Virus record (IMG/VR): IMGVR_UViG_3300033049_000066
Coordinates: 62,001 to 126,000 of that record
DNA length: 64,000 bases
Reading direction: 5' to 3' (one strand)
The translations under genes were made by a program, and so were the position numbers. The notes below the pieces were generated by a model. That model did not search any database. It was not told the origin of the DNA and saw nothing but the letters and a program-made list of their open reading frames with translations. Positions 4,327-54,293 of this stretch are shown in pieces (the stretch's first letter is position 1; each line of letters opens with the position of its first letter).

Positions 4327-4354
4327 TAAATACAGCATAACAAGGAATTAACTA

Positions 4355-7300
4355 ATGGCATCAACAATTAATACATCAAACATTGATACAACATACCCGA
4401 TCGCTGGGCAAGACAACGACAGCCAGGGCTTTCGTGATAACTTCACGAATATTAACACTAATTTCGCATCTGCGAAGACTGAGATAGAAGACTTACAAGG
4501 TAAGGTCATTCTCAAGTCTGCACTGACCGGAACAACGTTAGATAATGACATGGCCGGCGCGCTAATAACAGCCGCGCAGATCCAGGGCTTCCGAGGCACA
4601 GTTAAAAACATCGCCTCAGTAGCAGCAGCCGCTGAAATCAACGTATCTGAAGGTCCGTATCAGCAAATCACGCCAACCGAAAGCACTACATTATCCTTTA
4701 CAAACTGGTCACCGAGCGGAACACATAGCGCGGTGCAAGTTGAAATTACAATAACTGACGTGTTGTTTACAGTTACCTTGCCAGGAACTGTAACCCTTGG
4801 CACAGATGGACTGCTGGGATTTGACGGCACTAAAATTACATTTGCGAGTCTCGGTACGTTTATCTTTGAATTCTCCACTGTAACTGCCGGTGGCACCATT
4901 GCAATAACTGACGTAACTAGAGGACGCTCACTCAACTTAGTCGACGATTTAACTCCCCAACTTGGCGGAAGCTTAGATGTTAACGGTAATTCAATTGTAT
5001 CAATTACTAATGGTGATATTATTATCGCGCCCGGTGGCACCGGTGACCTTATTCTTGATGGGCTTAGCTGGCCACAATCAGATGGCGGGATCGGCTATTT
5101 CTTACAAACTAATGGCTCGGGTCAACTTAGTTGGTCGGCATCCGCAGGAATCTCGAATATAATTGAAGATTCTAGTCCCCAGCTTGGTGGAACGTTAGAT
5201 GTTAACGGTAATTCAATTGTATCAATTACTAATGGTAATATTGCTATTACGCCAGATGGAATCGGCAGTATTGTTCTTGATGGACTTAACTGGCCACAAG
5301 CAGATGGAACAGCTTCTTATTTCTTACAAACAGATGGCTCGGGTCAACTTAGTTGGTCGGCCGCTGGTGGATTGCTAAATGTAGTTGAAGATTTAACACC
5401 TCAGCTTGGTGGAACGTTAGATGTTAACGGCTTTTCTATAATAACTACTGATGCAATCGAAGCCGCAGTTAGTCCGATCCTTATAACAGGCGGAAATGAA
5501 TCAGGCACCACCGGTCAATATGCAGGCCATGTAACATTGCAGGGTGGAAATGCCTCGCCCGGCACAGCCGGTAGCGTCAATCTATACGCTGGCAGCACCA
5601 CCAGCGGTTCATATTACGCCGGCAACGTTCGTGTATACGGGGGTGATGCGGCTAGTAACAAAGGTGGTGGCATCATTATAAAGAGCGGCGACGCCTTATC
5701 TGCTAATAGTAACTTCGACAGTGGCCTGATTTTTATAACCACACCTAGCCCAACTGCTGGCGGAAGCGGTGGTAACATTAATCTTACTACAGGCAATGGT
5801 AGCGGCCCATATGGCGACGGTGGCACCATTAATATCACAGCCGGTAACAGTGCCTTATATTTCGGCGGTGATGTTAACATCTCTGCTGGCTCTGGTGGCA
5901 CTGGGTACTTTGGAGGTCACGTTAACATCACCGCAGGTACCAGCAATGCCGGGTACGTAGGCGACATAGTATTAACTGCTGGCGCTGGTGGTGTAGCAGG
6001 TGAAGGTGCGGTAGAAATTAAAAATGCTAACTCTGCAATCTCAGGTCGAGTACACATTTACGAAAGTAGCGCAAATGGCACGAATAAAGTACAACTACTT
6101 GCCCCTGTCACATTAGCTGCCGACACGAATTTTGTATTCCCACCAACAGATGGTGCCAACGGTGAGGTACTGTCAACAGATGGTAGCGGTGTTACATCTT
6201 GGATTGCGGCCGGCGGGAGCAATAACTGGCTGACGGCAAACAATGGTTCAGATTTTTCAGTCGCACCGACTGCGGCGTTCCTTAATGCCATTACTATTGG
6301 CAATGGCGCATCTTCGGGATATAGAGATTCGATTGCCATCGGGACAAGCGCTAATGCATTAGGTAGAAGCGTATCAATTGGTGAGGGATCCAGTGGCACC
6401 GGATCGTATTGTGTGGCGATAGGTAAAGCAGCTCAAGCTAATTCGTCAACTACAACTGTAGTCGGGTATAACGCCGTTGCTAATGGGAATAGTGGTATAT
6501 CTTTAGGTCCAAATACTATCTCATCCGGTAGTAACTCTATTGTTATTGGTAATGGATCAAGTGCAGCACTTAATAATTCTATTGCTATTGGTAGCGATAC
6601 TGATGTTGTATTGGTGAATCAAACGGCAATTGGCTACCGGTGTGACGCAGGTGTAGTAACAACAGATGTTGCCTACTCAGTTAAGATTGGTGCAGGTAAT
6701 CCATTTGCGTCTACTGATAAAAACATGCTTCACTTATTCAGTAAGGGTAAACTTGAATTATATGGTGATGAAGCACAATATATATTACCTAATTATGCAA
6801 CTGGTTCAATTCCAGCTACTACCAATGAAGGTGGTGCTGTTTGGGATTCAACAACCAAAGAACTTAAGATATATAACGGAACTGCATTCACCGCTATCGG
6901 CGGTGGTGGAGCATCCAATAACTGGATAAGTGCGAACGTAGGCGTTGATTTTGCAACTGCGCCATCTTCTATTTCGACTAACTCAATTGTAATTGGTGAT
7001 AATGCCTTTGCTGGCAATGGTGTACTTGAAATCGAGGGTATTGCTATAGGTAAAGATGCAGGGGCTGGTCGTGCTTATAGTATCGCAATTGGATCAAATG
7101 CTGGACTGTTCACTGGCGCACCAACCACCAACTCAGCCAGTATCGCTATCGGGCAGAATGCACAAACTACCGGCGCATTTGATATTGTCGTTGGCCGAAA
7201 TTCTAGTTCAGAGGCAGGTAGCTCTAATGTAGCAATAGGTAACACCGCCCGAGCATACGGCACCGCCGTAGATAGTATTGTAATGGGGCGCGAATCGCTA

Positions 7301-7915
7301 AGTAACAAGTCAACACAAATTGCTATAGGTAGAGCTTGTAATGTAGCATCAGTTACAACAGATGTTGAATACTCAGTTAAGATTGGTGCAGGAACCCCAA
7401 CACTAGCTACTGATAAAAACATGCTTCACTTATTCAGTAAGGGCAAACTTGAATTATACGGAGATGAAGCACAATATATATTACCTGATTATGCAACTGG
7501 CAGCTTACCAGCAGGTGTTGAAGGCGGCATAGCTTATGACTCATCAACAAGTAGTGCGAAATTGTTTGATGGTACAAACTGGGGCGACATAGCCGGCAAT
7601 GATACTGCTGGCTCATATGGCACAACTGGGGCGATATCACTAAACACAGCAAATGATACTTACTTTTATCCAACTGCCACTACAACCGGCGTGATCACGT
7701 TTACATTTACTGGCGCGGCGATAAGTGGTAGAGTAACAACGTTTACTTTAGAAATGTTAGGTGCGGGCACCAATGCTCCGGTTTGGCCAGCAAGCGTTGA
7801 TTGGCCGGGTGGTACTGAACCAACTTGGACTGCGGGCGTTGACGTTGTAAGATTTACGACTAGAGATAACGGTACGACTTGGCTTGGTGTGCTTGACGGA
7901 ACAAATTTTTCATAA
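4355..7915 (+). CDS. tail fibre protein with YadA-head-like repeats
   Basis: YPIAGQDNDSQGFRDNF N-terminus, Gly-rich shaft, many SIAIG/SIVIG repeats; late motif at 4326. Confidence 0.85.
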   Translation: MASTINTSNIDTTYPIAGQDNDSQGFRDNFTNINTNFASAKTEIEDLQGKVILKSALTGTTLDNDMAGALITAAQIQGFRGTVKNIASVAAAAEINVSEGPYQQITPTESTTLSFTNWSPSGTHSAVQVEITITDVLFTVTLPGTVTLGTDGLLGFDGTKITFASLGTFIFEFSTVTAGGTIAITDVTRGRSLNLVDDLTPQLGGSLDVNGNSIVSITNGDIIIAPGGTGDLILDGLSWPQSDGGIGYFLQTNGSGQLSWSASAGISNIIEDSSPQLGGTLDVNGNSIVSITNGNIAITPDGIGSIVLDGLNWPQADGTASYFLQTDGSGQLSWSAAGGLLNVVEDLTPQLGGTLDVNGFSIITTDAIEAAVSPILITGGNESGTTGQYAGHVTLQGGNASPGTAGSVNLYAGSTTSGSYYAGNVRVYGGDAASNKGGGIIIKSGDALSANSNFDSGLIFITTPSPTAGGSGGNINLTTGNGSGPYGDGGTINITAGNSALYFGGDVNISAGSGGTGYFGGHVNITAGTSNAGYVGDIVLTAGAGGVAGEGAVEIKNANSAISGRVHIYESSANGTNKVQLLAPVTLAADTNFVFPPTDGANGEVLSTDGSGVTSWIAAGGSNNWLTANNGSDFSVAPTAAFLNAITIGNGASSGYRDSIAIGTSANALGRSVSIGEGSSGTGSYCVAIGKAAQANSSTTTVVGYNAVANGNSGISLGPNTISSGSNSIVIGNGSSAALNNSIAIGSDTDVVLVNQTAIGYRCDAGVVTTDVAYSVKIGAGNPFASTDKNMLHLFSKGKLELYGDEAQYILPNYATGSIPATTNEGGAVWDSTTKELKIYNGTAFTAIGGGGASNNWISANVGVDFATAPSSISTNSIVIGDNAFAGNGVLEIEGIAIGKDAGAGRAYSIAIGSNAGLFTGAPTTNSASIAIGQNAQTTGAFDIVVGRNSSSEAGSSNVAIGNTARAYGTAVDSIVMGRESLSNKSTQIAIGRACNVASVTTDVEYSVKIGAGTPTLATDKNMLHLFSKGKLELYGDEAQYILPDYATGSLPAGVEGGIAYDSSTSSAKLFDGTNWGDIAGNDTAGSYGTTGAISLNTANDTYFYPTATTTGVITFTFTGAAISGRVTTFTLEMLGAGTNAPVWPASVDWPGGTEPTWTAGVDVVRFTTRDNGTTWLGVLDGTNFS
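4945..5432 (+). repeat. 222-bp (74 aa) tandem repeat in tail fibre, about 2.2 copies
   Basis: gatgttaacgg at 4976, 5198 and 5420; PQLGGxLDVNG three times. Confidence 0.85.
6215..7600 (+). repeat. 696-bp (232 aa) tandem duplication in tail fibre
   Basis: aataactgg at 6221/6917; aacagatgttg...tactcagttaagattggtgcagg at 6661/7357; near-identical TDKNMLHLFSKGKLELYGDEAQYILP. Confidence 0.85.
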
Positions 7916-11413: not shown

Positions 11414-12346
11414 ATGGCAATAAAACAATTATGGACGGAATTATACCGGCCTAGCACAGTAGACGGATATGTTTTTCGAGACGACGCACAAAAAGTACAA
11501 ATTGAGAAGTGGATAGAAGAAAAATCAATTCCGCATCTTTTATTTAGCGGACCGGCCGGGACAGGGAAGACGTCACTTGCTAAGATTTTAATCAACGGCT
11601 GCGACGTTAACGAGTTTGACGTTAAGGAAATCAACGCAAGTAGAGACAACGGCGTAGATTACATTCGCGACACAATCGAAGGCTTCGTGCAGACAATGCC
11701 ATTTGGTGAATTTAAGGTGGTACTCTTAGATGAAGCAGATTATCTATCACCAAACGCACAAGCGGTACTTCGCGGCTTGATGGAAAAGTACGCACAATCA
11801 GCTCGCTTTATTTTAACGTGTAACTTTCCAAACAAAATTATCGGTGCCCTGCATTCACGCTGCCAGGGATTTCACATCAATAAAATTGACCCAACAGAAT
11901 TTACAGCACGGGTCGCAGAGGTTTGCATCGCCGAGGAAGTTGAATTCGACCTCGACACTTTAGACAGCTATGTAAAATCAACGTACCCGGACTTGCGAAA
12001 ATGTTTGAATCTTGTGCAAATGAATTCAACAACAGGCAAGCTAGACCAAGCTAACGTCAATGATACAGGCGGTGGAAGTGATGAGTGGAAACTCGCTGCG
12101 GTCGGACTGATGAAACAGCAGAAGTACACAAAGGCACGAGAAGTTATATGCGCAAGTATACGCCCAGAGGAGATTGAAGGCGTATACAGATGGATGTACG
12201 AGACACTTGAGCTATGGGGCGACACAGAAGAAAAACAAGATGCGGCGATACTAGTTATCCGCACCGGGTTAGTGAACCACACGCTAGTGGCCGACCCTGA
12301 AATAAACCTTGCTGCTTGCCTCATTGAATTAACACAACTAGATTAA
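11414..12346 (+). CDS. sliding-clamp loader AAA+ subunit (gp44/RFC-like)
   Basis: WTELYRP, GPAGTGKT, INAS, LLDEAD, SRC motifs. Confidence 0.95.
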   Translation: MAIKQLWTELYRPSTVDGYVFRDDAQKVQIEKWIEEKSIPHLLFSGPAGTGKTSLAKILINGCDVNEFDVKEINASRDNGVDYIRDTIEGFVQTMPFGEFKVVLLDEADYLSPNAQAVLRGLMEKYAQSARFILTCNFPNKIIGALHSRCQGFHINKIDPTEFTARVAEVCIAEEVEFDLDTLDSYVKSTYPDLRKCLNLVQMNSTTGKLDQANVNDTGGGSDEWKLAAVGLMKQQKYTKAREVICASIRPEEIEGVYRWMYETLELWGDTEEKQDAAILVIRTGLVNHTLVADPEINLAACLIELTQLD

Positions 12347-12358
12347 TAAGGAGAACAC

Positions 12359-17889: not shown

Positions 17890-18393
17890 ACTAAAATAGT
17901 AGACTATCGCATCACATCTTTCTTTAACCGTTATCATCAAAAGGTACTAAATAATCCGACATTGTACGTGTCGGGCGACTCAACCGTTAATGTCATACTA
18001 CCATCTGATTTGTTAGAGTATGCGAATGCAGCAGCTGGACATACTGGTTTTGGTTCTGGGGCAAGAGCTCGTGGTATTAGACAGCAGGTAAAAAATGCTA
18101 ACCTTGCCATTAAGGATATCTTCAATAGTATTGACAGTTTAATTACGTTTTTAGAATCTTCGGAATGCAACGCAGAAGCATATATTCAAGGGATAAAAGA
18201 AAAGCACCAAAGCGTTACTGTAAAAAATCAGTCGTTAGTTAGTGTTGACAATCGATCTGCCGATCAACATTTTAAATTGTTACATGCAAAGATTGATATT
18301 AACAGATTAGTGTTAAAATTCGGTTACGATGTAGTACTTGAGGCTCGAAAATTACTTACTATTAATGAATTTGAATTACGATTTGGAGTTTAG
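17887..18393 (+). CDS. hypothetical early protein
   Basis: first gene after the repeat promoter. Confidence 0.7.
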   Translation: MTKIVDYRITSFFNRYHQKVLNNPTLYVSGDSTVNVILPSDLLEYANAAAGHTGFGSGARARGIRQQVKNANLAIKDIFNSIDSLITFLESSECNAEAYIQGIKEKHQSVTVKNQSLVSVDNRSADQHFKLLHAKIDINRLVLKFGYDVVLEARKLLTINEFELRFGV

Positions 18394-18396
18394 ACA

Positions 18397-21300
18397 ATGT
18401 CGGTTAGGTATAAATTTAAGAGAATAATCTGGCTTTGTGATACAACAGATAAGAAACTTGCGACTGGTCAAGGTCTTCTTTACATGTGGCCTGATCCGAA
18501 TCCGTTAGTACCGCCGAAGTTCGGACTTATTAAGGCAAGTTCATATACTGGTGCAACGCCGGTCGAGGCATTCGAACGACGATATCCAAAATCATCCCAT
18601 AAAATTGATCAAGATAATATCGAACTTTTCGTGTATGAAATTGACGATAACAGGTTACACGATGATAAGATTAGAGCGGAGATCCACAAACGGTATATCC
18701 GTAACCCTGGGAGATTTCCGTTTGATGCTTATGATAAAGTTAATCATGTTGCACCGCAGGGTATTAATAACGAATCTTGCTTAGGTTATAATTACAATGA
18801 ACACAGCGGTGCCCTATTAGGATTAATCAAAGAATATTTCGGGATATTAGTAGTAGCAGACACGAGGGATCCGTGGATCCCTCGTGAAGCAGACCAAGAA
18901 AATACAGCAAAAGAAATCGCAAAAAAGTTAAAAACCAATGCACGGATTGCGTTAAACGGCCATACCGGATATGCGAAAATTATGATTACAATGGTCGCAA
19001 TACACCGGCATATATATCCATCAGATGGAGCATTTATTTTAGCAACTACGCCTGTAATTGACACGCTGTCGGGTATTATTTCGGATGCCACCGATTGGTA
19101 TTATGGTGGCAATCGGTGTAGACGAACTGTAGTCTATGACCGGGAGGCGCTAAATAATGGTAAAACCATTGCTGCAATGCGACAAGAAGCGGATAATGGC
19201 GACATAGTTTTCCTGAGCTTATCAGTTCAGGATATGCGATTTCAAGACAACGCATCATTGGTTATTGATGATAAAGAATTACGAGAAAAATACAAAGATT
19301 TAATTAGTGATGAGATTGAAATTGACCTATGGATAAGAGATGAAGCGCATTTTAACTATGCTGGCCTAGTAACCTCGAAGGTATTTGCTAGTTTGGATGA
19401 TCGGTGTCGATATATTATCGACACTAGCGCTAGCATTAACAAAATCGCTAACAATTACCACCCGGACTCAATAATAGACCGAGGCTTATTTTGGGCGCTT
19501 GCGCATGAAACAGAAAGGAAAACACCTCATATCCATATCGAGTCCCTTTCCGGAATGTGTTACGATACGCTAAGTCCCGACGTTCGTGAGGTATATAACG
19601 AAACCGAAGGATGGAGCCCATCAAAAATGACCGAACTTTTGCCGAACGGTCAGTTTAGAAGTTTAATCGCGATTAACTATATTTTAGAGAAACAGTATAT
19701 TTGCACCGATGAAAAGGAAGAAAATCCTTTGTCAATCATCAATGACATTGACTTACCGTATAAGTGTCGCCGCGTTGGCATGCATCTTTTTCCGGAGGGT
19801 GTCAACGGTACCCCTGCGAATATATACTTAAAAAAACTCGCAGATGATTTAAACGCAATGCCTCAATGGAGTCAGAAAGATGCATACGGGATAGCAAGGG
19901 CAATATTCATAACTCCTTATAATTTTAAAAAACATGCAGCAGCTCATACAAAGTCTAGCAACTCGTATCGCGATGTCATCGACTATCTCATGCAAACGTA
20001 TACTCATGTCGTTATTCTGACCCACAGGCGGTGGATCTTAGGTTCGAATATTCCGCCACTCGGACATGCAGTACAATGGGATAAAATTGTTGATCCATAC
20101 TGTCAAGAACAATTTGCCCCTGGAAGATTATTTAGAATCATGCCATGGAAAACTGCGATTAAGATATATGACCTGGCACCAGGCCACTATCTACAGAATT
20201 CAATATCGGAGATTGCGGCCAGCAGCAGTAAAATATTAAAGCAACCCGATGTTACGATCCTGTTACGTAATATTAGTTTTACAAGATATGAAAAAGGGAT
20301 CGGCATGAGATCTTGGACTCCGGAAGAGGTGTTTCGGCCATATAATAACATGCTTACTCGAAAATCCTTGTCGACGATTGGAGCCAGTATCTTAACAACA
20401 TTATCGTCCGTTGAGATTAATGCGTTGGCTTCGGCTTCATCTTCGTTAAAAAAGAACAAGGTGCTCGGAACAAACGAAAAAACTCAGCTTGTTGCTGAAA
20501 CCGGTACAGAGAAAGCTGCACCGAAGAACCAAAAAAGAAACAAGCAAGGCAAGGCGCCGGTTATGAATGACCGTAAAACATTAGATTTAATTAATAATAT
20601 ACTATTAGAAATCCCGTTTGTTGCTGTATCTACTAACATTTTGTTAATTGATGAAATATTAGATCATAGTATGATTCGGAGGATGTTTAATAGTATCATA
20701 GTTGACACTCTGCTAAATATCATAGCTAATAACCAAATTTTTAAACATGAATTACAGGATAAATTAACAGATATTCATTTAGCATTTGGGATATTGCCAT
20801 TTCTGGATATGCACGACGAGATATTTAAAAATACAACATTAAAAAAAGGTGAAGGCATTGTGTTTGTAAATTGCGAGGCCGCCGAATTTTTTGCAAATGA
20901 ATTTATTCGAGTATTTGCAATACCCAAACATACAACAGAAACAGTAGCAGTAGGAAACGCATTAAGTGGTAGTATACCGTTTTATTTGCAAAAACTGTTG
21001 CCTTGTGCTAATATAATATGTATTGAGAATAGTGATTACTATATTAGTCACTTAAAATCGTTGGGATTTACGTGTATAAAATACAACAACTTAAAGGAAA
21101 ACATGGTAAAAATTAAATACTGGGCCATTAACGCACCTTACCAAAAGGATGCGGGTGGTGTGAATGATAGCGGTAACAAACAGGGCAGCTATTGGTTTGC
21201 TTTCGTCGAAAAGATATTTGCGGTCGGACCCCCGGATGCGAAAATATTTAGTATCTCACCAAAGGCTATATTTGGAGCAGGCAATTATGGAAAATCAGCG

Positions 21301-25288: not shown

Positions 25289-25669
25289 ATGCTACGAATA
25301 AAAACGAACCCTCTTAAGAAAATACCAGAACATGCAAAATTTGAAAATACAGAAGCACTTAGTCAAACAGGTATTGAAATGCTAATTGCACTAAACATGA
25401 CACAGAAAACGGTACTAACCGGACCGGAAGTTGGCATTGATTCTAAAATATTAGTAACAAAGGAACCACCACATTTCTTTTTCAATCCAATTCTTTCTGA
25501 GCCAAAAAACTTGCAATCTGAGGCGAAATCAAGTACAATAGCTATAACCTATACAAATTATTTAGGTGAAGTCTCCCAACATACACGAATAGATAGTGAC
25601 GGAAGTATTACAAAAGCAATCAATAATTTAAACAACGGCATAACACGTGCCAAACGAATACAGGAATAA
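25289..25669 (+). CDS. degenerate peptide-deformylase-like protein
   Basis: GPEVGI...FFNP...ITYTNYLG...NLNNGI follow the PDF layout but EGCLS and HExxH are absent. Confidence 0.5.
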   Translation: MLRIKTNPLKKIPEHAKFENTEALSQTGIEMLIALNMTQKTVLTGPEVGIDSKILVTKEPPHFFFNPILSEPKNLQSEAKSSTIAITYTNYLGEVSQHTRIDSDGSITKAINNLNNGITRAKRIQE

Positions 25670-25672
25670 AAT

Positions 25673-27931
25673 ATGCAAATCAATCCAGAAATCGAGCAGA
25701 TAACCGACTACGCAATTGCTCTCGCAAAACGGCAGCATCAGGAATATGTATTAGTTGAACATTTGCTGGTCGCATTAATAAGTTACGAACCATTTTACAA
25801 TTGTTTAAAAGGTTACGGTGTTAATATCGACGCAATGGTGAATGACATTGAGCTGTACCTGCATAATTTACCGGCAGCTCCGAGCACTGTCGAAAAGCCA
25901 AAACGAACTAACAGCATAGAGCGAGTGTTCAACCGTGCTGTAACGCAGGTTATATTTAGTGGTCGGCGCTTTGTTACTACAATTGATTTATTCTTGGCGA
26001 TCTCGTCTGAGGCAAGCAGCCACGCATCATATTTTATTTTAAAATATGGCGTTGATGACAAGGAGGCGATCGCATCGTACTGGAATGATAACTACAGCGA
26101 TATCGGTGGGAAGATGAGCGATACGCAATCAGACGAGGTGCTTGAAGAACATTGCACAAACGTATCGGCCAAGGCAGCAGCAGGTGAGCTCGAGCCGCTT
26201 ATTGGGCGAGAGGCCGAAGTGAAGGACGCGATAGAAATCCTCGCTAAGAAATTTAAGTCCAATGTGCTGATGGTCGGGGAGCCAGGTGTAGGCAAAACCG
26301 TCATCTTAGAAGGGCTCGCACAGAAAATCAACGCCGACGAAGTGCCGACGTTCATGAAGGGACACACCGTCTGGGAGCTCAACATCGGTGACATGCTCGC
26401 TGGCAGCAAGTACCGAGGAGAATTTGAAGAGAAATTTAAGAAAGTGATCAAGGCCTTGGAAGCGTCGGGCAAGGGTATACTTTTTATCGACGAAGCTCAC
26501 ACTATGAAGGGTGCTGGCAGCGGCGCAGGATCATCGTTGGATTTCGCGAACATGCTGAAGCCGGTGATCACACGCGGCAAGATCAAGGTCGTCGCCTGCA
26601 CCACCTGGGACGAATACTACGAATCCTTCGAGAAAGATAAGGCATTGATGCGCAGATTTTACAAACTAATTGTCGACGAACCAGATCACGACACCACAGT
26701 GAAGATTTTAACGGGCGTGGCGAAACGTCTGTCAGCATATCACAATGTGAAAATCGACCCGAGTGCTATCGCGTCAACCGTGGACTTGAGTACTCGCTAC
26801 ATTCACGACAGATTCAACCCAGACAAATCAATCGACATCTTAGACGCGGCCTGCGCTAAGGAACGTGCGAGTGACAACCACGACACGCTAATTAAAACTG
26901 AACATATCATTCAGCAACTAAGCAAAGTCACCGGCGTACCTACAGAACGTCTAAGCAATGAAAAAAGCAAGACACTATTGACACTGCGTGGCAATATCGA
27001 CAGCAAATTATTCGGCCAAGAAGATGCGGTGGAAGAAGTACTTAATAAAATTTACATCAACTTTGGTGGATTAGCCGAAGAAAATAAACCAGTCGCAAGC
27101 TTCTTGTTTCTTGGGCCAACCGGCACAGGTAAAACCGAGCTAGCTAAGCTAATCAGTGAAAACTTAGACATGGAACTATTACGTTACGATATGTCCGAGT
27201 ACATGGAAAAACATACAGTGGCATCACTTATTGGTGCGCCACCGGGTTATGTCGGCTACGAAGAGTCAGGTGGTGGTGGCAAGCTAATCTCAGATATTAG
27301 CAAACATCCATTCTCTGTACTGTTACTTGACGAAGTTGAGAAAGCTCACCCTGACGTGTTCAACGTGCTGCTGCAGGTCCTGGACGAAGGTAAGATTACT
27401 AGTCGCAGCGGAAAATCAGTGTCACTGCGAAATACAATCGTCATCATGACGTCAAATCTTGGCGCAGCTGACAATGAGAAAAATAACATTGGTTTCACAG
27501 ACCTGGCCCGCAGCGGCGAAGAAGATAAAGCAGTTAAAGAATTCTTTAAACCTGAGTTCCGCAACAGACTTGACGGTATTGCTAAGTTCAAGAAACTTGA
27601 AGATATAAATGTGAAGAAAATTGTTGTCAAGTTCATAAACGAACTAAAAGTCAGCTTGAAATCTAAGGGGATTGCATTCAACGCAACAGAGGCGGCCATC
27701 AATCATATTGCTGATACTGGTTACGATTCAGCACTTGGAGCACGGCCAATTAAACGACAGATCTCAGATGTGTTTAAACAGCCACTAAGTAAACGAATAT
27801 TATTTGAAGAATTAAGCAATTGCACAATTACCGCAGATTATGTCGACGGAGAAATTGTATTTACTGACACATGCGTTCCGGTAATCCCAGAGCTAAATCC
27901 CGAACCACATATTTTAACCCAAGATATTTAA
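25673..27931 (+). CDS. clpA: ClpA-type AAA+ chaperone/protease ATPase
   Basis: Clp N-domain, GEPGVGKT/FIDEAH, GPTGTGKT/LDEVEKAH, FKPEFRNRLD; 752 aa, no ClpB middle domain. Confidence 0.92.
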   Translation: MQINPEIEQITDYAIALAKRQHQEYVLVEHLLVALISYEPFYNCLKGYGVNIDAMVNDIELYLHNLPAAPSTVEKPKRTNSIERVFNRAVTQVIFSGRRFVTTIDLFLAISSEASSHASYFILKYGVDDKEAIASYWNDNYSDIGGKMSDTQSDEVLEEHCTNVSAKAAAGELEPLIGREAEVKDAIEILAKKFKSNVLMVGEPGVGKTVILEGLAQKINADEVPTFMKGHTVWELNIGDMLAGSKYRGEFEEKFKKVIKALEASGKGILFIDEAHTMKGAGSGAGSSLDFANMLKPVITRGKIKVVACTTWDEYYESFEKDKALMRRFYKLIVDEPDHDTTVKILTGVAKRLSAYHNVKIDPSAIASTVDLSTRYIHDRFNPDKSIDILDAACAKERASDNHDTLIKTEHIIQQLSKVTGVPTERLSNEKSKTLLTLRGNIDSKLFGQEDAVEEVLNKIYINFGGLAEENKPVASFLFLGPTGTGKTELAKLISENLDMELLRYDMSEYMEKHTVASLIGAPPGYVGYEESGGGGKLISDISKHPFSVLLLDEVEKAHPDVFNVLLQVLDEGKITSRSGKSVSLRNTIVIMTSNLGAADNEKNNIGFTDLARSGEEDKAVKEFFKPEFRNRLDGIAKFKKLEDINVKKIVVKFINELKVSLKSKGIAFNATEAAINHIADTGYDSALGARPIKRQISDVFKQPLSKRILFEELSNCTITADYVDGEIVFTDTCVPVIPELNPEPHILTQDI

Positions 27932-47779: not shown

Positions 47780-48045
47780 TTGATCCAGATCTTACTCATT
47801 ATGGCGTATTCTTACAGGAGATACACTCTATTAGAGATACGCCTGATGAGTTATCAGCAACCACTACCATTACCATAAAAAGCACGGCGACTGCCACTAA
47901 TGTTAATGCAGAGCAATTGATACGTGACCTCGCTTTGATGAGCGCGGTGCGCGGAACTGCTGATCCAGCAGTAAAAGACGCGTTTGAAAAATTATTAACA
48001 ATAATGGCACTTACACAATCTACTAGCACAAGGCCACAATTTTAA
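47776..48045 (+). CDS. small protein, PAL-helix family
   Basis: ADPAVKDAFEKLLTIMAL. Confidence 0.6.
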   Translation: MIDPDLTHYGVFLQEIHSIRDTPDELSATTTITIKSTATATNVNAEQLIRDLALMSAVRGTADPAVKDAFEKLLTIMALTQSTSTRPQF

Positions 48046-48048
48046 AAT

Positions 48049-48330
48049 ATGAAAGACGTGAATGGCAAGTCGTTAAAACGTGAGCACTATATGCTCTTAA
48101 AGGACTTAGGAATAGAGATTGTTATGTACGACTTAAGAACGTATATCGAAAAAAATCAACACCATTACGGATTTGAAGTGCATGGATCTTTAACGACCGG
48201 TGTTGATTTTGACGAGATACTCGCCCTGTTAAGACTTATGAAATCAGCCACGAATACGTCGAATCCAGCTATCGTCGACGCACTTGATCGATTAAGACTA
48301 GTTATTGGAATAACAGATGGACATAACTGA
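48049..48330 (+). CDS. small protein, PAL-helix family
   Basis: SNPAIVDALDRLRLVIGI. Confidence 0.6.
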   Translation: MKDVNGKSLKREHYMLLKDLGIEIVMYDLRTYIEKNQHHYGFEVHGSLTTGVDFDEILALLRLMKSATNTSNPAIVDALDRLRLVIGITDGHN

Positions 48331-50818: not shown

Positions 50819-51040
50819 GTAATTGCACAAAGGTGATTACCCAGGCAATGCCTCGTTACACATAAACGTTAGATGTGATGGAAAGAGAATGAACTTAACA
50901 ATACCAATGAGCTTAACGAAAATCTCATATCACAATTTGGACATAACCGTGTCCAATAATCTAACACTAAATCAAACAGGCACCTCAGAGGTCTTTGGCG
51001 AAACTAATACGTACATTGACAAATCTGAGTACAATATTGA

Positions 51041-51070
51041 TTGACATAATATGTCAATCTCTGCTATACT
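51041..51070 (+). promoter_or_regulatory. promoter with a palindromic operator-like site over the -35
   Basis: TTGACATA-A-TATGTCAA; TTGACA-N18-TATACT with TG extension. Confidence 0.65.
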
Positions 51071-51123
51071 ATTAGTAGAAAAGTTACTAGCAGAAGCTAA
51101 CTAGCACATAAACAGGAGTACAA

Positions 51124-51807
51124 ATGAGTTTCAATAAAATAAAAACAAATCCAGAGCTGGGGCACGAAATTGCTAAGCATCTTGAAAAAATAGGTGTACA
51201 AACACCAATGAAAGACAACGGTCTAGATCGGACAACAAAAATTGATATTATTACACAAAAAATGACCGATATTATGACAACGTTAGGGCTTGATCTAACC
51301 GATGACAGCTTAATGGATACACCAAAACGTGTGGCAAAAATGTACGTTAACGAAATATTTTGGGGGCTAGATGCAGACGCATTTCCAAAATGTACCGCGG
51401 TAGAAAACAAAATGAATTACGATGCTATGGTTGTAGAACGTAACATTAATGTTCAGTCAAATTGCGAACATCACTTTGTTGTAATTGATGGTTTCGCAAC
51501 CGTCGCGTACATTCCGGGAAAAACTGTAATTGGTCTTAGTAAGATTAATCGTGTAGTTGAATACTTCGCGAAGCGACCACAAATACAAGAACGACTAACG
51601 GCGCAAATTTATTATGCACTAGCGTATATACTAAACACAGAAGATGTTGGTGTTATTATTGACGCCCAGCATTTTTGTGTAAAATCAAGGGGCGTCGAAG
51701 ATGTAGGTAGTAGCACCGTCACTAGTAAATTAGGTGGCGCATTTAAAAACGATCCAGCAACTAGAGCTGAATTCCTTGCAATTTTTAACAACAACGGTAA
51801 TCATTAA
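51124..51807 (+). CDS. folE: GTP cyclohydrolase I
   Basis: DTPKRVAKMY, SNCEHHF, GLSKINR, RPQIQERLT, HFCVKSRGV. Confidence 0.96.
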   Translation: MSFNKIKTNPELGHEIAKHLEKIGVQTPMKDNGLDRTTKIDIITQKMTDIMTTLGLDLTDDSLMDTPKRVAKMYVNEIFWGLDADAFPKCTAVENKMNYDAMVVERNINVQSNCEHHFVVIDGFATVAYIPGKTVIGLSKINRVVEYFAKRPQIQERLTAQIYYALAYILNTEDVGVIIDAQHFCVKSRGVEDVGSSTVTSKLGGAFKNDPATRAEFLAIFNNNGNH

Positions 51808-51809
51808 TT

Positions 51810-52142
51810 ATGATATTTTTTAAAAAACTATTAGCTAGGTGGGCGGCGGAAGGAACGCAAGCATACGAATACAACGGAGAACCGTTGTATACCTCGGCGA
51901 CATCCGCAGCTAATGCTAAGCGGCCATACAACGGTGAATCACGTGGAGAGGAATTTAAGAATCCAATGAACATTACATTGTACAACGCAATGGGCGGGCG
52001 AATTATTAAATTTCATAGTTACAATCGCAAGTTGGAGCAATCGCAAGAAACCACGTACATCGTTCCGAGTGATGAAGATTTTGAAAGTGCGCTAGGACAG
52101 TTTATTACGATTGAAGCAATGAAGCACACTAACAATGAGTAA
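51810..52142 (+). CDS. hypothetical protein
   Basis: 110 aa ORF in operon. Confidence 0.6.
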   Translation: MIFFKKLLARWAAEGTQAYEYNGEPLYTSATSAANAKRPYNGESRGEEFKNPMNITLYNAMGGRIIKFHSYNRKLEQSQETTYIVPSDEDFESALGQFITIEAMKHTNNE

Positions 52143-52464
52143 TTCATCTGACTTACATAATTTATATAATTTACCGGATGATCAATTTTTATGGCCGACG
52201 GGCAAGCCGGTTGTGGGCAGCACCGTACAGGTTACTACACAGAACGGGACTATCCCCGTCTACGATCGTGGGCTAGTTGTCAAAGATGCAGACGGAAACG
52301 ACGTTGATGTTGGTGAGTTTATAACCTCGGTCAATAAACGTTTATGTATAATACAACCAAGTCTTGAAGCGCACGAGAAATATCCGGCGTTGAAGGATGC
52401 GTATGATCAATATAAAATGTTAGAAAAATTGCTAATGGAAGGTGATAATGCTAACAAAGATTAA
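52135..52464 (+). CDS. small protein, PAL-helix family
   Basis: KYPALKDAYDQYKMLEKL. Confidence 0.6.
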   Translation: MSNSSDLHNLYNLPDDQFLWPTGKPVVGSTVQVTTQNGTIPVYDRGLVVKDADGNDVDVGEFITSVNKRLCIIQPSLEAHEKYPALKDAYDQYKMLEKLLMEGDNANKD

Positions 52465-52657
52465 AATTTTCGTGCAATGTAAATTGTTCGGCCTGCACGA
52501 TTGGACCTGTGCTAGAGAACAAGGCATTCCCGCCACCCAGGATCAGATCTCCGGCGGAGTTCAAGGTTTTACTAATTATGCGAAACTGTATTGTAAGGAT
52601 TGCGGTACGATTAGCAGGCTGTCACAAAGACAGATTGATGATGTCTTTAAACGTTAA
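52448..52657 (+). CDS. small Cys/His protein (DUF1660-like CxLFGxHxW...CxxCG)
   Basis: CKLFGLHDW...CKDCG. Confidence 0.5.
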   Translation: MLTKIKIFVQCKLFGLHDWTCAREQGIPATQDQISGGVQGFTNYAKLYCKDCGTISRLSQRQIDDVFKR

Positions 52658-52658
52658 A

Positions 52659-52732
52659 GTCTGCGTAGCTAAGAGGCCTAGCAAGGGATTTTAAATCTCT
52701 GCACGTGGGTTCGACCCCCACCGCAGGCACCA
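52659..52732 (+). tRNA. tRNA with UUA anticodon (ochre-suppressor type), CCA encoded
   Basis: acceptor GTCTGCG/CGCAGGC, D-arm GCT/AGC, anticodon stem AGGGA/TCTCT with loop TTTTAAA, T-arm GTGGG-TTCGACC-CCCAC, ACCA end. Confidence 0.85.
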
Positions 52733-52779
52733 AATATTATACTAACATTAATCACTCATTAATCACTTCAGGAACTACA

Positions 52780-53484
52780 ATGAATCAAGATATTAAAGAA
52801 CAATTTTTGCGTGATACTAAAAATCACACCATGGAGGTCCTGCACGAAGATGGACTGTATCGTCACCTAAGATTTACAAAAGGTGGCTCACAGTGCTATC
52901 GCTTCGACATCCATACCTGGCCTGGATTTTTATGTATTTGTCAAGACATGGGAACTTACGTTTTTAGTCGCACACCCGACATGTTTGATTTCTTCCGGCT
53001 GAAGGACAATGACTGGAGCAAAAAGCATATTATCAACACGGGGTACTGGGCAGAAAAGTTACAAGCGGTAGATCGTGACTCGGCGCGAGGTGATGGTAGC
53101 GGCGCGACGGAATTCTCGCAAGAAAAATTTGCCGAGCACGTAAAGGAAGAATATGACAATTTCTGCGAAGGGCTAGCGGACCATGATGAAGACGAACTTA
53201 CAGAAGCGTTTGACGATGACCGCTCGATGAAATCACAGCTTGCGGAATTGTGGGAATGTCTTGAATCGGAGGTGATTGCGCAGTCTTACGATGGGCAACT
53301 TAGAGCGTATGATGCGGCGATGGGATTTGAGTGGCAAGACGATAACGGCAACCTCGCGTTCGACATGCATGACTTTTGGGATCATAACTGCACGGAATAT
53401 ACATTTCACTTTATTTGGTTGCTACACGCAATCGTGTACGGAATTGGGGAATACGATAAACTGAATTTAGTAAATGATACCTAA
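52780..53484 (+). CDS. hypothetical phage protein
   Basis: AGGA RBS; the track start at 52705 lies inside the tRNA, so the start was moved. Confidence 0.7.
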   Translation: MNQDIKEQFLRDTKNHTMEVLHEDGLYRHLRFTKGGSQCYRFDIHTWPGFLCICQDMGTYVFSRTPDMFDFFRLKDNDWSKKHIINTGYWAEKLQAVDRDSARGDGSGATEFSQEKFAEHVKEEYDNFCEGLADHDEDELTEAFDDDRSMKSQLAELWECLESEVIAQSYDGQLRAYDAAMGFEWQDDNGNLAFDMHDFWDHNCTEYTFHFIWLLHAIVYGIGEYDKLNLVNDT

Positions 53485-53699: not shown

Positions 53700-54293
53700 A
53701 TGAAGTGGACAATAGATAAAAGTTTTGACTGGTGCTATGGTCACCGCGTACATAATCAGTCGTTGAATGCAGATTTCACCGGCGCGGACGGTGCCTGCCT
53801 CGCATGTAGACATTTACACGGTCATCAAGGACAGCTTAAGGTTATGCTAGAGGGCGATGAACTAATCCGTGGAATGGTCACGGATTTTAAACATCTGGGC
53901 TGGATGAAAACGTTCATAGACGATGTCTTAGATCATAAGTTCATCATGGACATCAATGATCCTCTGTTACCACACGAGGTACCGGATTACTACGGAAATG
54001 CGATTGCGACTAGCGACAGTCACATTGCAGCAGGCGGGCTGCTGCTGAGTAGATGTACAGAATATCCCGAGGGGTACTGGACGCCACGCTTAGATTTGCT
54101 ACCATCCGACACGATACAGGCCGTCCGTGAAAAATATGAAGGCATTATATTCGTTGATTTCGTACCGACCTCAGAGAACTTGGCAGCGTGGTTGCTTGGC
54201 ATAGCACAGAAAAAGATGAAGGAACTAGATGTTAAGGTGGTAGCCGTAGAATTTTGGGAGACCCCAAAGAGCCATTGCAGGGTGGAAATATAA
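53700..54293 (+). CDS. queD: 6-carboxytetrahydropterin synthase
   Basis: CYGHRV, CRHLHGH, GMVTDF, LDHKF, PTSENLA, WETP. Confidence 0.92.
   Translation: MKWTIDKSFDWCYGHRVHNQSLNADFTGADGACLACRHLHGHQGQLKVMLEGDELIRGMVTDFKHLGWMKTFIDDVLDHKFIMDINDPLLPHEVPDYYGNAIATSDSHIAAGGLLLSRCTEYPEGYWTPRLDLLPSDTIQAVREKYEGIIFVDFVPTSENLAAWLLGIAQKKMKELDVKVVAVEFWETPKSHCRVEI

What the first reader, a model, noticed from the sequence alone, without database searches (positions are those of the whole stretch)
52659..52732. tRNA with a UUA anticodon (reads UAA stop) in a genome that uses TAA as a stop
Seen: a complete 74-nt cloverleaf with encoded CCA. The only good 5-bp anticodon stem (AGGGA/TCTCT) closes the loop TTTTAAA, which puts UUA at positions 34-36. 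Long conserved genes (polymerase, ClpA, folE) are intact in the standard code and many end in TAA, so there is no genome-wide recoding. Inference: regulated read-through, sabotage of host termination, or a decoy for anticodon nucleases. Several genes end in tandem stops (1786-1791, 4324-4329, 12344-12349), which would resist read-through. Single in-frame stops separated from the next ATG by one codon (18391-18397, 25667-25673, 48043-48049) are candidate fusion sites.
Basis: partly seen in the sequence, partly recalled or inferred. Interest (0 to 1): 0.75.

Follow-up and report, generated by a model that had tools for sequence, protein, structure and literature searches.

The report
Ochre suppressor tRNA in marine jumbo phage
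A marine giant phage that uses the normal genetic code carries an intact tRNA gene able to read the stop codon TAA; related phages keep the same gene with a TAG-reading anticodon, no phage gene seems to need it, and its purpose is as unknown as for similar tRNAs already reported in other phages.

Summary
Window 52659-52732 (+) is a complete 74-nt tRNA with encoded CCA and anticodon UUA (ARAGORN; Rfam 51.1 bits, cut-off 29). Contigs from two seawater samples carry the same letters, so it is not an assembly error.

The window belongs to a 293-kb jumbo phage record with 25 more tRNAs clustered 28 kb away. Three related phage contigs hold a tRNA at the same position, downstream of folE and upstream of a phrog_4657 gene. 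All three have anticodon CUA. The cloverleaf is kept by compensatory changes (6 pairs; 0/500 shuffles). So a stop-reading tRNA is conserved, and UUA here is probably a C34-to-U change from an amber ancestor.

Its nearest sense relatives are phage tRNA-Lys genes. Similar CUA tRNAs occur in the cultured phages Summit, DLP_3 and Arash.

All three genomes use the standard code. I found no in-frame stop aligned to a sense codon, no conserved read-through extension, no enrichment of tandem stops and no shift in stop context.

Best reading: a lysine-type nonsense suppressor giving leaky termination, without a dedicated phage target. It is a new member of a known, unexplained kind.

The parts
52659..52732 (+). 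tRNA gene, 74 nt, encoded CCA, discriminator A; ochre-suppressor type
   Evidence: ARAGORN; Rfam RF00005 51.1 bits; identical in contigs from two samples; positional orthologues in three related phage contigs with compensatory stem changes
52689..52695 (+). anticodon loop UUUUAAA; anticodon UUA at 52691-52693; U33, U35, A36, A37 and A38 are invariant in the four orthologues, position 34 is U here and C in the other three
   Evidence: sequence; alignment A4
52442..52657 (+). upstream 71-aa ORF (phrog_8294, weak match); its TAA stop ends 1 nt before the tRNA, so the tRNA is probably cut out of a polycistronic transcript (inferred)
   Evidence: orthologues in G001 and G002; no convincing promoter or terminator next to the tRNA
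52780..53484 (+). downstream 234-aa gene of unknown function (phrog_4657); it lies downstream of the tRNA in all four related contigs and serves as the synteny anchor
51124..51807 (+). folE (GTP cyclohydrolase I), the left synteny anchor
   Evidence: phrog_2197 E = 1.5e-75; PF01227; 77% identical in G001
53700..54293 (+). queD-like 6-pyruvoyl-tetrahydropterin synthase, the right synteny anchor
   Evidence: phrog_2389 E = 3.8e-33; 72-75% identical in the three relatives

Best explanation
This is an intact, selectively maintained nonsense-suppressor tRNA of lysine-tRNA ancestry. Shown: a canonical cloverleaf with anticodon UUA. It is one of four positional orthologues in related marine jumbo phages (three CUA, one UUA), with stems kept by compensatory changes and loop positions 33 and 35-38 invariant. 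Its nearest sense relatives are phage tRNA-Lys genes that differ in the anticodon only at position 36 (U to A). Inferred: the host LysRS charges it, because U35, U34 and A73 are Lys identity elements. The A36-A37-A38 loop would make it a MiaA (i6A37) substrate. It then competes with RF1 and RF2 at UAA, and by U34 wobble at UAG, inserting Lys at low efficiency. The classical E. coli lysine ochre suppressors work this way. The UUA form most likely arose by a C34-to-U transition from an amber (CUA) ancestor and so keeps UAG reading. No phage gene depends on it. The effect is genome-wide leaky termination, tolerated because the extensions are short (median 8 codons). The selected benefit is not in decoding the phage's conserved genes. 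It most plausibly lies in acting on host or competitor translation or in buffering stop codons, and this last step is unresolved.
For: Gene and anticodon. Not an assembly error. Orthology: the order folE, small ORFs, tRNA, phrog_4657, queD recurs in G001, G002 and L118. G000 and G001 share 259 reciprocal-best genes at about 60% median amino-acid identity. Structure under selection: 97.6% of cells paired, 6 pairs changed on both sides, 0/500 shuffles reach the score, and slid controls give 31-49% paired. Lys ancestry: a pattern that leaves the anticodon free returned only tRNA-Lys CUU and UUU besides the suppressors. These Lys genes are 73-82% identical to the suppressors, against at most 71% for any other isotype among 109 tRNAs. 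Every sense-tRNA BLAST hit in cultured phages is annotated Lys. Wider lineage: CUA tRNAs with the same D arm and anticodon arm occur in Stenotrophomonas phages Summit and DLP_3 and in Salmonella phage Arash. With Y34 left free, 58 CUA against 1 UUA were found among 60 IMG/VR loci (one further CTA match had no ARAGORN call), so UUA is the rare and probably derived state. No dedicated target. Short extensions.
Against: Expression, charging and suppression were not observed; no RNA data were laid. Lys identity is inferred from sequence similarity and from E. coli identity rules; the host is unknown and two orthologues have G73. Four orthologues are few, so retention of U35 and A36 could partly be shared ancestry. 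The genome shows no adaptation to an ochre suppressor: TAA is still 59% of stops, tandem stops are not enriched and the +4 context is unchanged. That fits low efficiency or a recent change, but also an inactive tRNA. Targets in genes without homologues in the two relatives cannot be excluded. G000 is only 83% complete.
Confidence: 0.6

Rival explanations
1. Programmed read-through: the tRNA exists to make C-terminally extended or fused versions of particular phage proteins, for example at the in-frame junctions the first reader listed.
For: G000 has 29 adjacent gene pairs in frame across a single stop, 24 of them TAA. At the junction of the 126-aa ORF and the ClpA-like gene the stop is TAA in G000 and TAG in G001, matching each genome's suppressor.
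Against: In G002 the ClpA junction is out of frame. Only 1 of the 29 junctions is in frame with a single stop in all three genomes. That stop is TAA in all three, which the CUA tRNAs of G001 and G002 cannot read. None of 126 gene triplets has TAG in all three genomes. No alignment continues past a stop into a conserved extension other than the next gene. The absence of TGA among in-frame pairs is explained by ATGA-type overlaps, which are out of frame. The published searches in XacN1 and Summit also found no targets (PMC5852040, PMC9022506).
Confidence: 0.08
2. Host-directed or anti-defence read-through: the tRNA is expressed to corrupt termination on host, prophage or competitor mRNAs. The change of anticodon retargets it from UAG to UAA.
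For: The tRNA is conserved although no phage target exists. It sits apart from the 25-tRNA cluster among nucleotide-metabolism genes, which suggests separate regulation. In all my gene calls TAG stops are about half as frequent in the two CUA carriers (10.8% and 9.8%) as in G000 (18.8%; p = 8e-4 and 3e-4).
Against: The TAG difference disappears in conserved genes (McNemar p = 0.18; 19, 18 and 10 of 126 triplets), so it may come from gene-calling noise or G+C content. G000 does not avoid TAA. The host and any target are unknown. No published case was found.
Confidence: 0.17
3. Buffer or stepping stone: the suppressor masks nonsense mutations in a very large genome, or it is the first step towards stop-codon recoding as proposed for gut phages.
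For: The evolutionary model of Borges et al. places suppressor acquisition in standard-code relatives before in-frame stops appear (10.1101/2021.08.26.457843). TAG is the rarest stop in the two CUA carriers.
Against: The state is stable across four lineages that have diverged to 50-65% protein identity without a single recoded gene, so it does not look transitional. TAA, the commonest stop, is a poor candidate for reassignment. The expected benefit of masking rare nonsense mutations is small compared with reading through one's own stops (inference).
Confidence: 0.1
4. Non-translational role: a Lys-like decoy for tRNA-Lys-directed anticodon nucleases such as PrrC or PARIS, or merely an RNase P processing signal in the operon.
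For: The body resembles tRNA-Lys. All three phages carry a T4 Rnl1-type RNA ligase, the enzyme class that repairs cleaved tRNA-Lys in T4, so tRNA cleavage is probably a pressure on them (PMC10264068). The tRNA lies 1 nt after a stop codon inside an operon.
Against: Known evasion tRNAs keep a sense anticodon so that they can replace the cleaved host tRNA; this one cannot decode Lys. A decoy or a processing signal puts no constraint on the anticodon, yet a stop anticodon is kept in all four orthologues and in 59 of the 60 similar tRNAs found with Y34 free.
Confidence: 0.04
5. Artefact or dead gene: an assembly error in a Lys (UUU) loop, or a decaying pseudo-tRNA.
For: It is a single base away from a Lys anticodon. 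The genome shows no compensation for an ochre suppressor.
Against: Contigs at depth 369 and 16.8 from two samples are identical. The orthologues also have A36. The cloverleaf is perfect, scores 51 bits and shows compensatory changes.
Confidence: 0.01

Closest known systems
Amber suppressor tRNAs of cultured standard-code phages: Stenotrophomonas phages Summit and DLP_3, Salmonella phage Arash
   Same: The D arm and the anticodon stem-loop are alike, with a CUCUAAA-type loop; 78-87% identity over 60-72 nt to the G001 orthologue. The genomes use the standard code. For Summit the authors searched for target genes and found none (PMC9022506).
   Different: Those tRNAs read UAG (CUA) and lie at the head of a small tRNA cluster. 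This one has UUA and stands alone 28 kb from its cluster. The phages are unrelated and lack folE. In GenBank the DLP_3 and Arash genes are labelled tRNA-Glu and tRNA-Phe, while ARAGORN gives CUA.
Suppressor tRNAs reported in other standard-code jumbo phages: XacN1 (2 x CUA), RsoM2USA (CUA), Atu_ph07 (UCA), phiKp24 (Sup-TTA), phage G (Sup-UUA)
   Same: A stop-anticodon tRNA in a large phage with many tRNAs, no recoding and no known target (PMC5852040, PMC8504454, PMC6102473, PMC8386662, PMC12484599). phiKp24 and phage G also have UUA.
   Different: No sequence similarity to them was detected by blastn. For those phages no orthologue series and no anticodon switch has been described. Here the same locus carries CUA in three relatives and UUA in one.
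E. coli lysine ochre suppressors (tRNA-Lys UUU to UUA, supG/supL class; my own knowledge, not tested here)
   Same: The same single change at position 36 of a Lys-type tRNA. These suppressors read UAA and, by wobble, UAG, and they insert Lys at low efficiency.
   Different: Those are laboratory mutants of a host gene. This is a natural, conserved phage gene whose body differs from the phage's own tRNA-Lys copies.
Suppressor tRNAs of stop-codon-recoded phages (crAss-like, Lak and other clades; TAG to Gln, TGA to Trp)
   Same: A phage-encoded tRNA that reads a stop codon in a host using the standard code (10.1101/2021.08.26.457843).
   Different: Those genomes have many in-frame recoded stops in late genes and sometimes encode a release factor. 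None of that is found here. The recoded stop there is TAG or TGA, not TAA, and the amino acid is Gln or Trp rather than the Lys inferred here.
Phage tRNAs that evade tRNA-targeting defences (T5 tRNA-Lys against PARIS, tRNA-Tyr against retron effectors; anticodon-loop variants)
   Same: A phage tRNA of Lys type with an altered anticodon loop, in a phage that also carries tRNA-repair ligases (PMC10264068, PMC11555353).
   Different: Evasion tRNAs keep the sense anticodon. This one has lost it.

Membership tests
tRNA (Rfam RF00005) | Cloverleaf matching the covariance model above the gathering score | tested here: met
   51.1 bits against 29, full model 1-71; ARAGORN call
tRNA (Rfam RF00005) | Stems maintained by compensatory substitutions among homologues | tested here: met
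   6 pairs changed on both sides, 97.6% of cells paired, 0/500 shuffles, slid controls 31-49%
Nonsense-suppressor tRNA | Anticodon complementary to a stop codon within a 7-nt loop with U33 and a purine at 37 | tested here: met
   Loop U32 U33 U34 U35 A36 A37 A38; the orthologues have CUA
Nonsense-suppressor tRNA | Is expressed, aminoacylated and causes read-through in vivo | not testable with these tools
   Only DNA contigs were laid; this needs a reporter assay or tRNA sequencing
Stop-codon-recoded phage (alternative genetic code) | In-frame copies of the reassigned stop inside conserved genes, aligned to sense codons in relatives | tested here: not met
   Three-genome tblastn with each stop read as X: every stop that was spanned is a gene boundary or off-frame noise
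Stop-codon-recoded phage (alternative genetic code) | Poor coding density in the standard code that recoding repairs | tested here: not met
   84% coverage by ORFs of 100 aa or more, and about 90% by my gene calls, in the standard code. The rise seen with TAA as sense occurs on both strands, as expected from spurious ORFs in A+T-rich DNA.
Stop-codon-recoded phage (alternative genetic code) | Phage-encoded release factor or dedicated aminoacyl-tRNA synthetase (frequent, not obligatory) | tested here: not met
   No RF-1 domain, class II LysRS-type synthetase or MiaA in G000. G001 and G002 have only a 132-aa ArfB-like GGQ protein.
tRNA-Lys lineage | Nearest sense homologues are tRNA-Lys | tested here: met
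   An anticodon-free pattern found only Lys CUU and UUU; identity ranking; the sense BLAST hits are all annotated Lys
tRNA-Lys lineage | LysRS identity set U34, U35, U36 and A73 (E. coli rules, from established knowledge) | tested here: inconclusive
   U34, U35 and A73 are present and U36 is replaced by A. The orthologues have C34, and two of them have G73. The actual charging is unknown.
Defence-evading replacement tRNA (T5 tRNA-Lys type) | Keeps the sense anticodon of the host tRNA that the nuclease destroys | tested here: not met
   The anticodon is UUA or CUA in all four orthologues

The most novel reading that the evidence does not exclude
A lineage of Lys-derived suppressor tRNAs is kept by unrelated standard-code phages not to decode phage genes but as a weapon or counter-measure acting on termination in the infected cell. 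In this phage the weapon was retargeted, by one base, from the rare stop UAG to UAA, even though UAA ends 59% of the phage's own genes.
Probability: 0.15. Interest if true: 0.7.

Novelty: new member of a known kind. Interest (0 to 1): 0.4.

Why it matters
Stop-reading tRNAs keep turning up in phages that use the ordinary genetic code, and nobody knows why. Several genome papers looked for target genes and found none. This locus adds a comparative handle: one syntenic gene in four diverged jumbo phages, structurally conserved, with the anticodon switched between amber and ochre. That argues the stop-reading property itself is selected, and that the target is not a conserved phage gene. It also ties the marine genes by sequence to amber suppressors in cultured phages (Summit, DLP_3, Arash), where deletion and reporter experiments can be done. 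Practically, annotators should not read such a tRNA as evidence for an alternative code. Two GenBank records label members of this lineage as tRNA-Glu and tRNA-Phe.

Tried and rejected
1. Genome-wide recoding. ORF coverage under four codes and homology across stops in three genomes gave no in-frame stop aligned to a sense codon.
2. Fusion of the 126-aa ORF with the ClpA-like gene. The stop type matches each suppressor in G000 and G001, but the junction is out of frame in G002, so I rejected it.
3. All 29 in-frame junctions of G000 traced into the relatives. Only the 1118-aa/4405-aa pair is conserved in frame, and its stop is TAA in the CUA carriers too.
4. A conserved TAG stop as target: 0 of 126 triplets.
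5. Adaptation of the genome to the suppressor. Tandem stops, distance to the next stop, the +4 base and the share of TGA show no signal. The lower TAG share in CUA carriers is significant in all gene calls but not in conserved genes.
6. A link to 7-deazaguanine DNA modification. Summit, DLP_3 and Arash lack folE, and no TGT/DpdA-family match exists in G000 or G001, so the neighbourhood looks like synteny only.
7. Neighbouring small ORFs searched in Pfam and PHROGs: nothing informative.
8. Near-identical DNA in cultured phages: none. An exact-backbone search in IMG/VR: none. The metagenome scan returned only the source contig of G001. The bacterial-genome scan for the Lys-like backbone found nothing, so there is no host clue.
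9. A single-protein search with the phrog_4657 gene failed. It worked only with a two-sequence alignment.

Full report
THE OBSERVATION. The window holds exactly one tRNA call, at 52659-52732 on the + strand, anticodon tta (ARAGORN). Rfam's tRNA model matches 52659-52729 end to end at 51.1 bits (gathering score 29, E = 4.8e-8) and places the same loop, UUUUAAA. The universal features can be read directly from the sequence. These are a 7-bp acceptor stem with a U2-G71 wobble, U8, A14, GG in a 7-nt D loop, the 5-bp anticodon stem AGGGA/UCUCU, U33, A37, a 4-nt variable loop, TTC in the T loop, discriminator A and an encoded CCA. The anticodon lies at 52691-52693.

NOT AN ASSEMBLY ERROR. The stretch occurs in seawater metagenome runs. 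A contig from the probable source sample (word depth 369) covers the tRNA without a single difference. So does a contig from a second sample (depth 16.8, spanning 51000-52895). Contigs drop rare variants, so minor alleles are not excluded.

THE GENOME. The window is bases 62001-126000 of a 293,278-bp IMG/VR virus record that is estimated 83% complete, with 41.6% G+C. The family B DNA polymerase is 46% identical to that of Sinorhizobium phage Phosso. It is about 41% identical to those of the Rak2/GAP32-like jumbo phages, and there is no near-identical DNA among cultured phages. ARAGORN finds 26 tRNAs in the genome. Twenty-five lie in a cluster at 142.9-158.3 kb. The suppressor stands alone at 114.66 kb.

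NEIGHBOURHOOD. The tRNA's neighbours are folE (51124-51807), three small ORFs, a 234-aa phrog_4657 protein (52780-53484), a queD-like gene (53700-54293) and a phosphoribosyltransferase. The tRNA starts 1 nt after the TAA of the upstream 71-aa ORF. No convincing promoter or terminator flanks it. It is therefore probably cut out of an operon transcript, which is an inference.

ORTHOLOGUES. I scanned 80 IMG/VR loci that encode folE relatives for tRNAs. Only one locus, that of the closest relative (77% identical folE), had a tRNA: a 74-nt tRNA with anticodon CUA downstream of folE. That contig, G001, is a complete 344,483-bp genome with terminal repeats. An alignment of the phrog_4657 protein then found G002, a 249,797-bp contig with a 74-nt CUA tRNA about 580 bp upstream of that gene. 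A pattern that leaves the anticodon free but fixes the clade's acceptor and arms found a fourth contig, L118 (42.8 kb). It has a 76-nt CUA tRNA and the same gene order.

G000 and G001 share 259 reciprocal-best genes in conserved order, at about 60% median amino-acid identity. The four tRNAs therefore occupy one ancestral locus.

STRUCTURE UNDER SELECTION. On the alignment of the four tRNAs, 97.6% of cells form standard pairs. Six of 21 pairs have changes on both sides. No shuffle out of 500 reaches the covariation score, and sliding the partners drops pairing to 31-49%. Loop positions U33, U35, A36, A37 and A38 are invariant. Position 34 is C in three sequences and U here. The structure is under selection, and every copy reads a stop.

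ANCESTRY. A search of IMG/VR for the D arm plus the anticodon arm, with the anticodon left as NNN, returned G001 and two sense tRNAs. Both of those are tRNA-Lys, one CUU and one UUU. Their anticodon arms differ from the G001 suppressor essentially by U36 in place of A36. Among 109 tRNAs from four phage sequences these Lys genes are the nearest (73-82% identity, against at most 71% for any other isotype). The phages' own clustered tRNA-Lys genes are of a different type. BLAST against cultured phages gives sense hits that are all annotated tRNA-Lys, in Aeromonas ST4, Arthrobacter Atuin, Mycobacterium Nanosmite and Streptomyces Coruscant.

RELATED SUPPRESSORS IN CULTURED PHAGES. The remaining BLAST hits are in Stenotrophomonas phages DLP_3 and Summit and in Salmonella phage Arash. 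ARAGORN calls all three CUA suppressors with the same arms. GenBank labels them tRNA-Glu, 'suppressor tRNA' and tRNA-Phe respectively. With the same relaxed backbone and position 34 left as Y, 60 IMG/VR loci matched. Fifty-eight were called CUA by ARAGORN, one had a CTA match without an ARAGORN call, and one was UUA. Only the three relatives share synteny with the window. UUA is therefore the rare state and probably derived by a C34-to-U transition. The direction is not proven, because the four-taxon tree is unrooted.

DOES ANY PHAGE GENE NEED IT? The standard code gives 84% coverage by ORFs of 100 aa or more and about 90% by my own gene calls. I read each stop codon in turn as X in each of the three genomes and aligned the translations to the other two. 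Every stop that an alignment spanned was a boundary between adjacent genes, with a stop at the same place in the relative, or it was off-frame noise. TGA, which has no suppressor, behaved the same way.

No gene among 126 triplets ends in TAG in all three genomes. G000 has 29 gene pairs in frame across a single stop. Traced into the relatives, only one pair stays in frame with a single stop in all three. That is the 1118-aa/4405-aa pair on the minus strand, outside the window. Its stop is TAA everywhere, including in the genomes whose tRNA cannot read TAA.

The most tempting case was the junction of the 126-aa ORF with the ClpA-like gene at 25667-25673. Its stop is TAA here and TAG in G001, but the junction is out of frame in G002.

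HAS THE GENOME ADAPTED TO THE TRNA? Stop usage in my gene calls is as follows.
- G000: TAA 58.9%, TAG 18.8%, TGA 22.3% (404 genes).
- G001: TAA 64.2%, TAG 10.8%, TGA 25.0% (500 genes).
- G002: TAA 61.4%, TAG 9.8%, TGA 28.9% (409 genes).

TAG is rarer in the two CUA carriers (p = 8e-4 and 3e-4). The difference is not significant among orthologous genes (34 against 23 discordant pairs, p = 0.18), and in the triplets the counts are 19, 18 and 10 of 126. I treat it as weak. An immediate second stop follows 9.9% of the TAA stops in G000, against 13.9% and 15.3% in the relatives. The base after the stop does not differ. Reading through a stop adds a median of 8 codons.

OTHER TRANSLATION GENES. G000 has no RF-1-domain protein, no class II LysRS-type synthetase and no MiaA. 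G001 and G002 encode a 132-aa ArfB-like protein with a GGQ motif; it is missing from the syntenic spot in G000. All three phages have a T4 Rnl1-type RNA ligase, and G000 also has an Rnl2-type ligase. The folE neighbourhood is not a general partner of such tRNAs: Summit, DLP_3 and Arash lack folE, and no TGT/DpdA-family gene was detected in G000 or G001.

HOW IT MOST LIKELY WORKS. Shown: an intact tRNA gene, kept at one locus and always with a stop anticodon, whose body descends from tRNA-Lys. Inferred from established knowledge of E. coli tRNA identity and suppression: LysRS relies mainly on U35, with U34, U36 and A73 contributing. This tRNA retains three of those four elements. The A36-A37-A38 loop is the determinant for MiaA. 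Ochre suppressors with U34 read UAA and, by wobble, UAG, and they are inefficient because both RF1 and RF2 compete at UAA. The natural lysine ochre suppressors of E. coli carry exactly this UUU-to-UUA change.

The tRNA should therefore insert Lys at a low rate at UAA and UAG, producing short C-terminal extensions on many proteins. The switch from C34 to U34 keeps UAG reading, which fits an ancestral role tied to UAG. What benefit maintains it is not resolved. The evidence excludes decoding of conserved phage genes and gives no sign of programmed fusions.

COMPARISON WITH WHAT IS KNOWN. Suppressor tRNAs are well documented in recoded phages (10.1101/2021.08.26.457843). They have also been reported in standard-code phages:
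- XacN1: two CUA tRNAs, no targets found (PMC5852040).
- RsoM2USA: CUA (PMC8504454).
- Atu_ph07: UCA (PMC6102473).
- Summit: CUA, no targets found, purpose stated as unknown (PMC9022506).
- phiKp24: Sup-TTA (PMC8386662).
- Phage G: Sup-UUA (PMC12484599).

This is thus a new member of a known, unexplained kind. Three things are new here: the orthologue series with an amber/ochre switch, the Lys ancestry, and the sequence link to cultured phages in which the question can be tested.

LIMITS. There are no RNA data, no host identification and only four orthologues. The gene calls are my own simple codon-usage caller and not a standard tool. G000 is incomplete. Targets in genes that lack homologues in G001 and G002 would have been missed.

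Noticed in passing
G001 (reverse-complement coordinates 289661-290059) and G002; absent from G000 genome 139244-139564: The two CUA-carrying relatives encode a 132-aa ArfB-like peptidyl-tRNA hydrolase with a GGQ motif, 71% identical between them, just upstream of the tRNA cluster. G000 lacks it at the syntenic spot and elsewhere in its 293 kb. Salmonella phage Arash also annotates a small 'peptidyl-tRNA hydrolase' about 1 kb from its suppressor tRNA. A ribosome-rescue factor could deal with ribosomes that read through to mRNA ends, but the link is not consistent.
   Followed up: partly
G000 genome 186448-186867 and 189782-190327 (outside the window): There is a T4 Rnl1-type RNA ligase in all three phages and an Rnl2-type ligase in G000 only. 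This is the enzyme class that repairs anticodon-nuclease cuts in tRNA-Lys in T4, and it suggests pressure from tRNA-cleaving defences.
   Followed up: partly
G000 genome 209420-225994, minus strand (outside the window): An 1118-aa ORF and a 4405-aa ORF are in frame and separated by a single TAA, followed directly (G000) or after one codon (G001, G002) by the ATG. The arrangement is conserved in all three genomes. It is the only in-frame junction conserved in all three.
   Followed up: partly
window 25289-25669 and 25673-27931: A 126-aa ORF with no Pfam or PHROG match sits in frame directly before a ClpA-like AAA+ gene. The stop is TAA here, TAG in G001, and the junction is out of frame in G002. 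The ClpA-like gene has its own Clp_N domain starting at its ATG.
   Followed up: yes
L121:1496-1569 (MT110073.1) and L123:1499-1573 (OQ632216.1): The GenBank records label these tRNAs tRNA-Glu (DLP_3) and tRNA-Phe (Arash). ARAGORN gives anticodon CUA for both, and they align with the Summit gene that is annotated as a suppressor.
   Followed up: yes
G000 genome 143466-143551 and 146714-146797 (outside the window): ARAGORN calls two tRNA-Gln(UUG) genes of 86 and 84 nt with long variable arms, which is unusual for Gln. Similar 86-nt Gln calls occur in G001 and G002. I did not examine them.
   Followed up: no
L130:928-959 (IMGVR_UViG_3300028920_000026, 190.7 kb): This is the only other UUA-anticodon tRNA among 60 IMG/VR loci with a similar D arm and anticodon arm. 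It has a different body and there is no synteny with the window.
   Followed up: no
window 52780-53484: The phrog_4657 protein next to the tRNA has no known function, but homologues (33-41% identity) occur in 87 cultured phage records, mainly of Mycobacterium, Arthrobacter and Gordonia, and also of Vibrio and Ralstonia.
   Followed up: partly
window 1795-4326 and 4355-7915: Two large ORFs carry He_PIG Ig-like domains and YadA-head repeats respectively. They are probably fibre or adhesin proteins, and the first ends in the tandem stop TAATAA.
   Followed up: no
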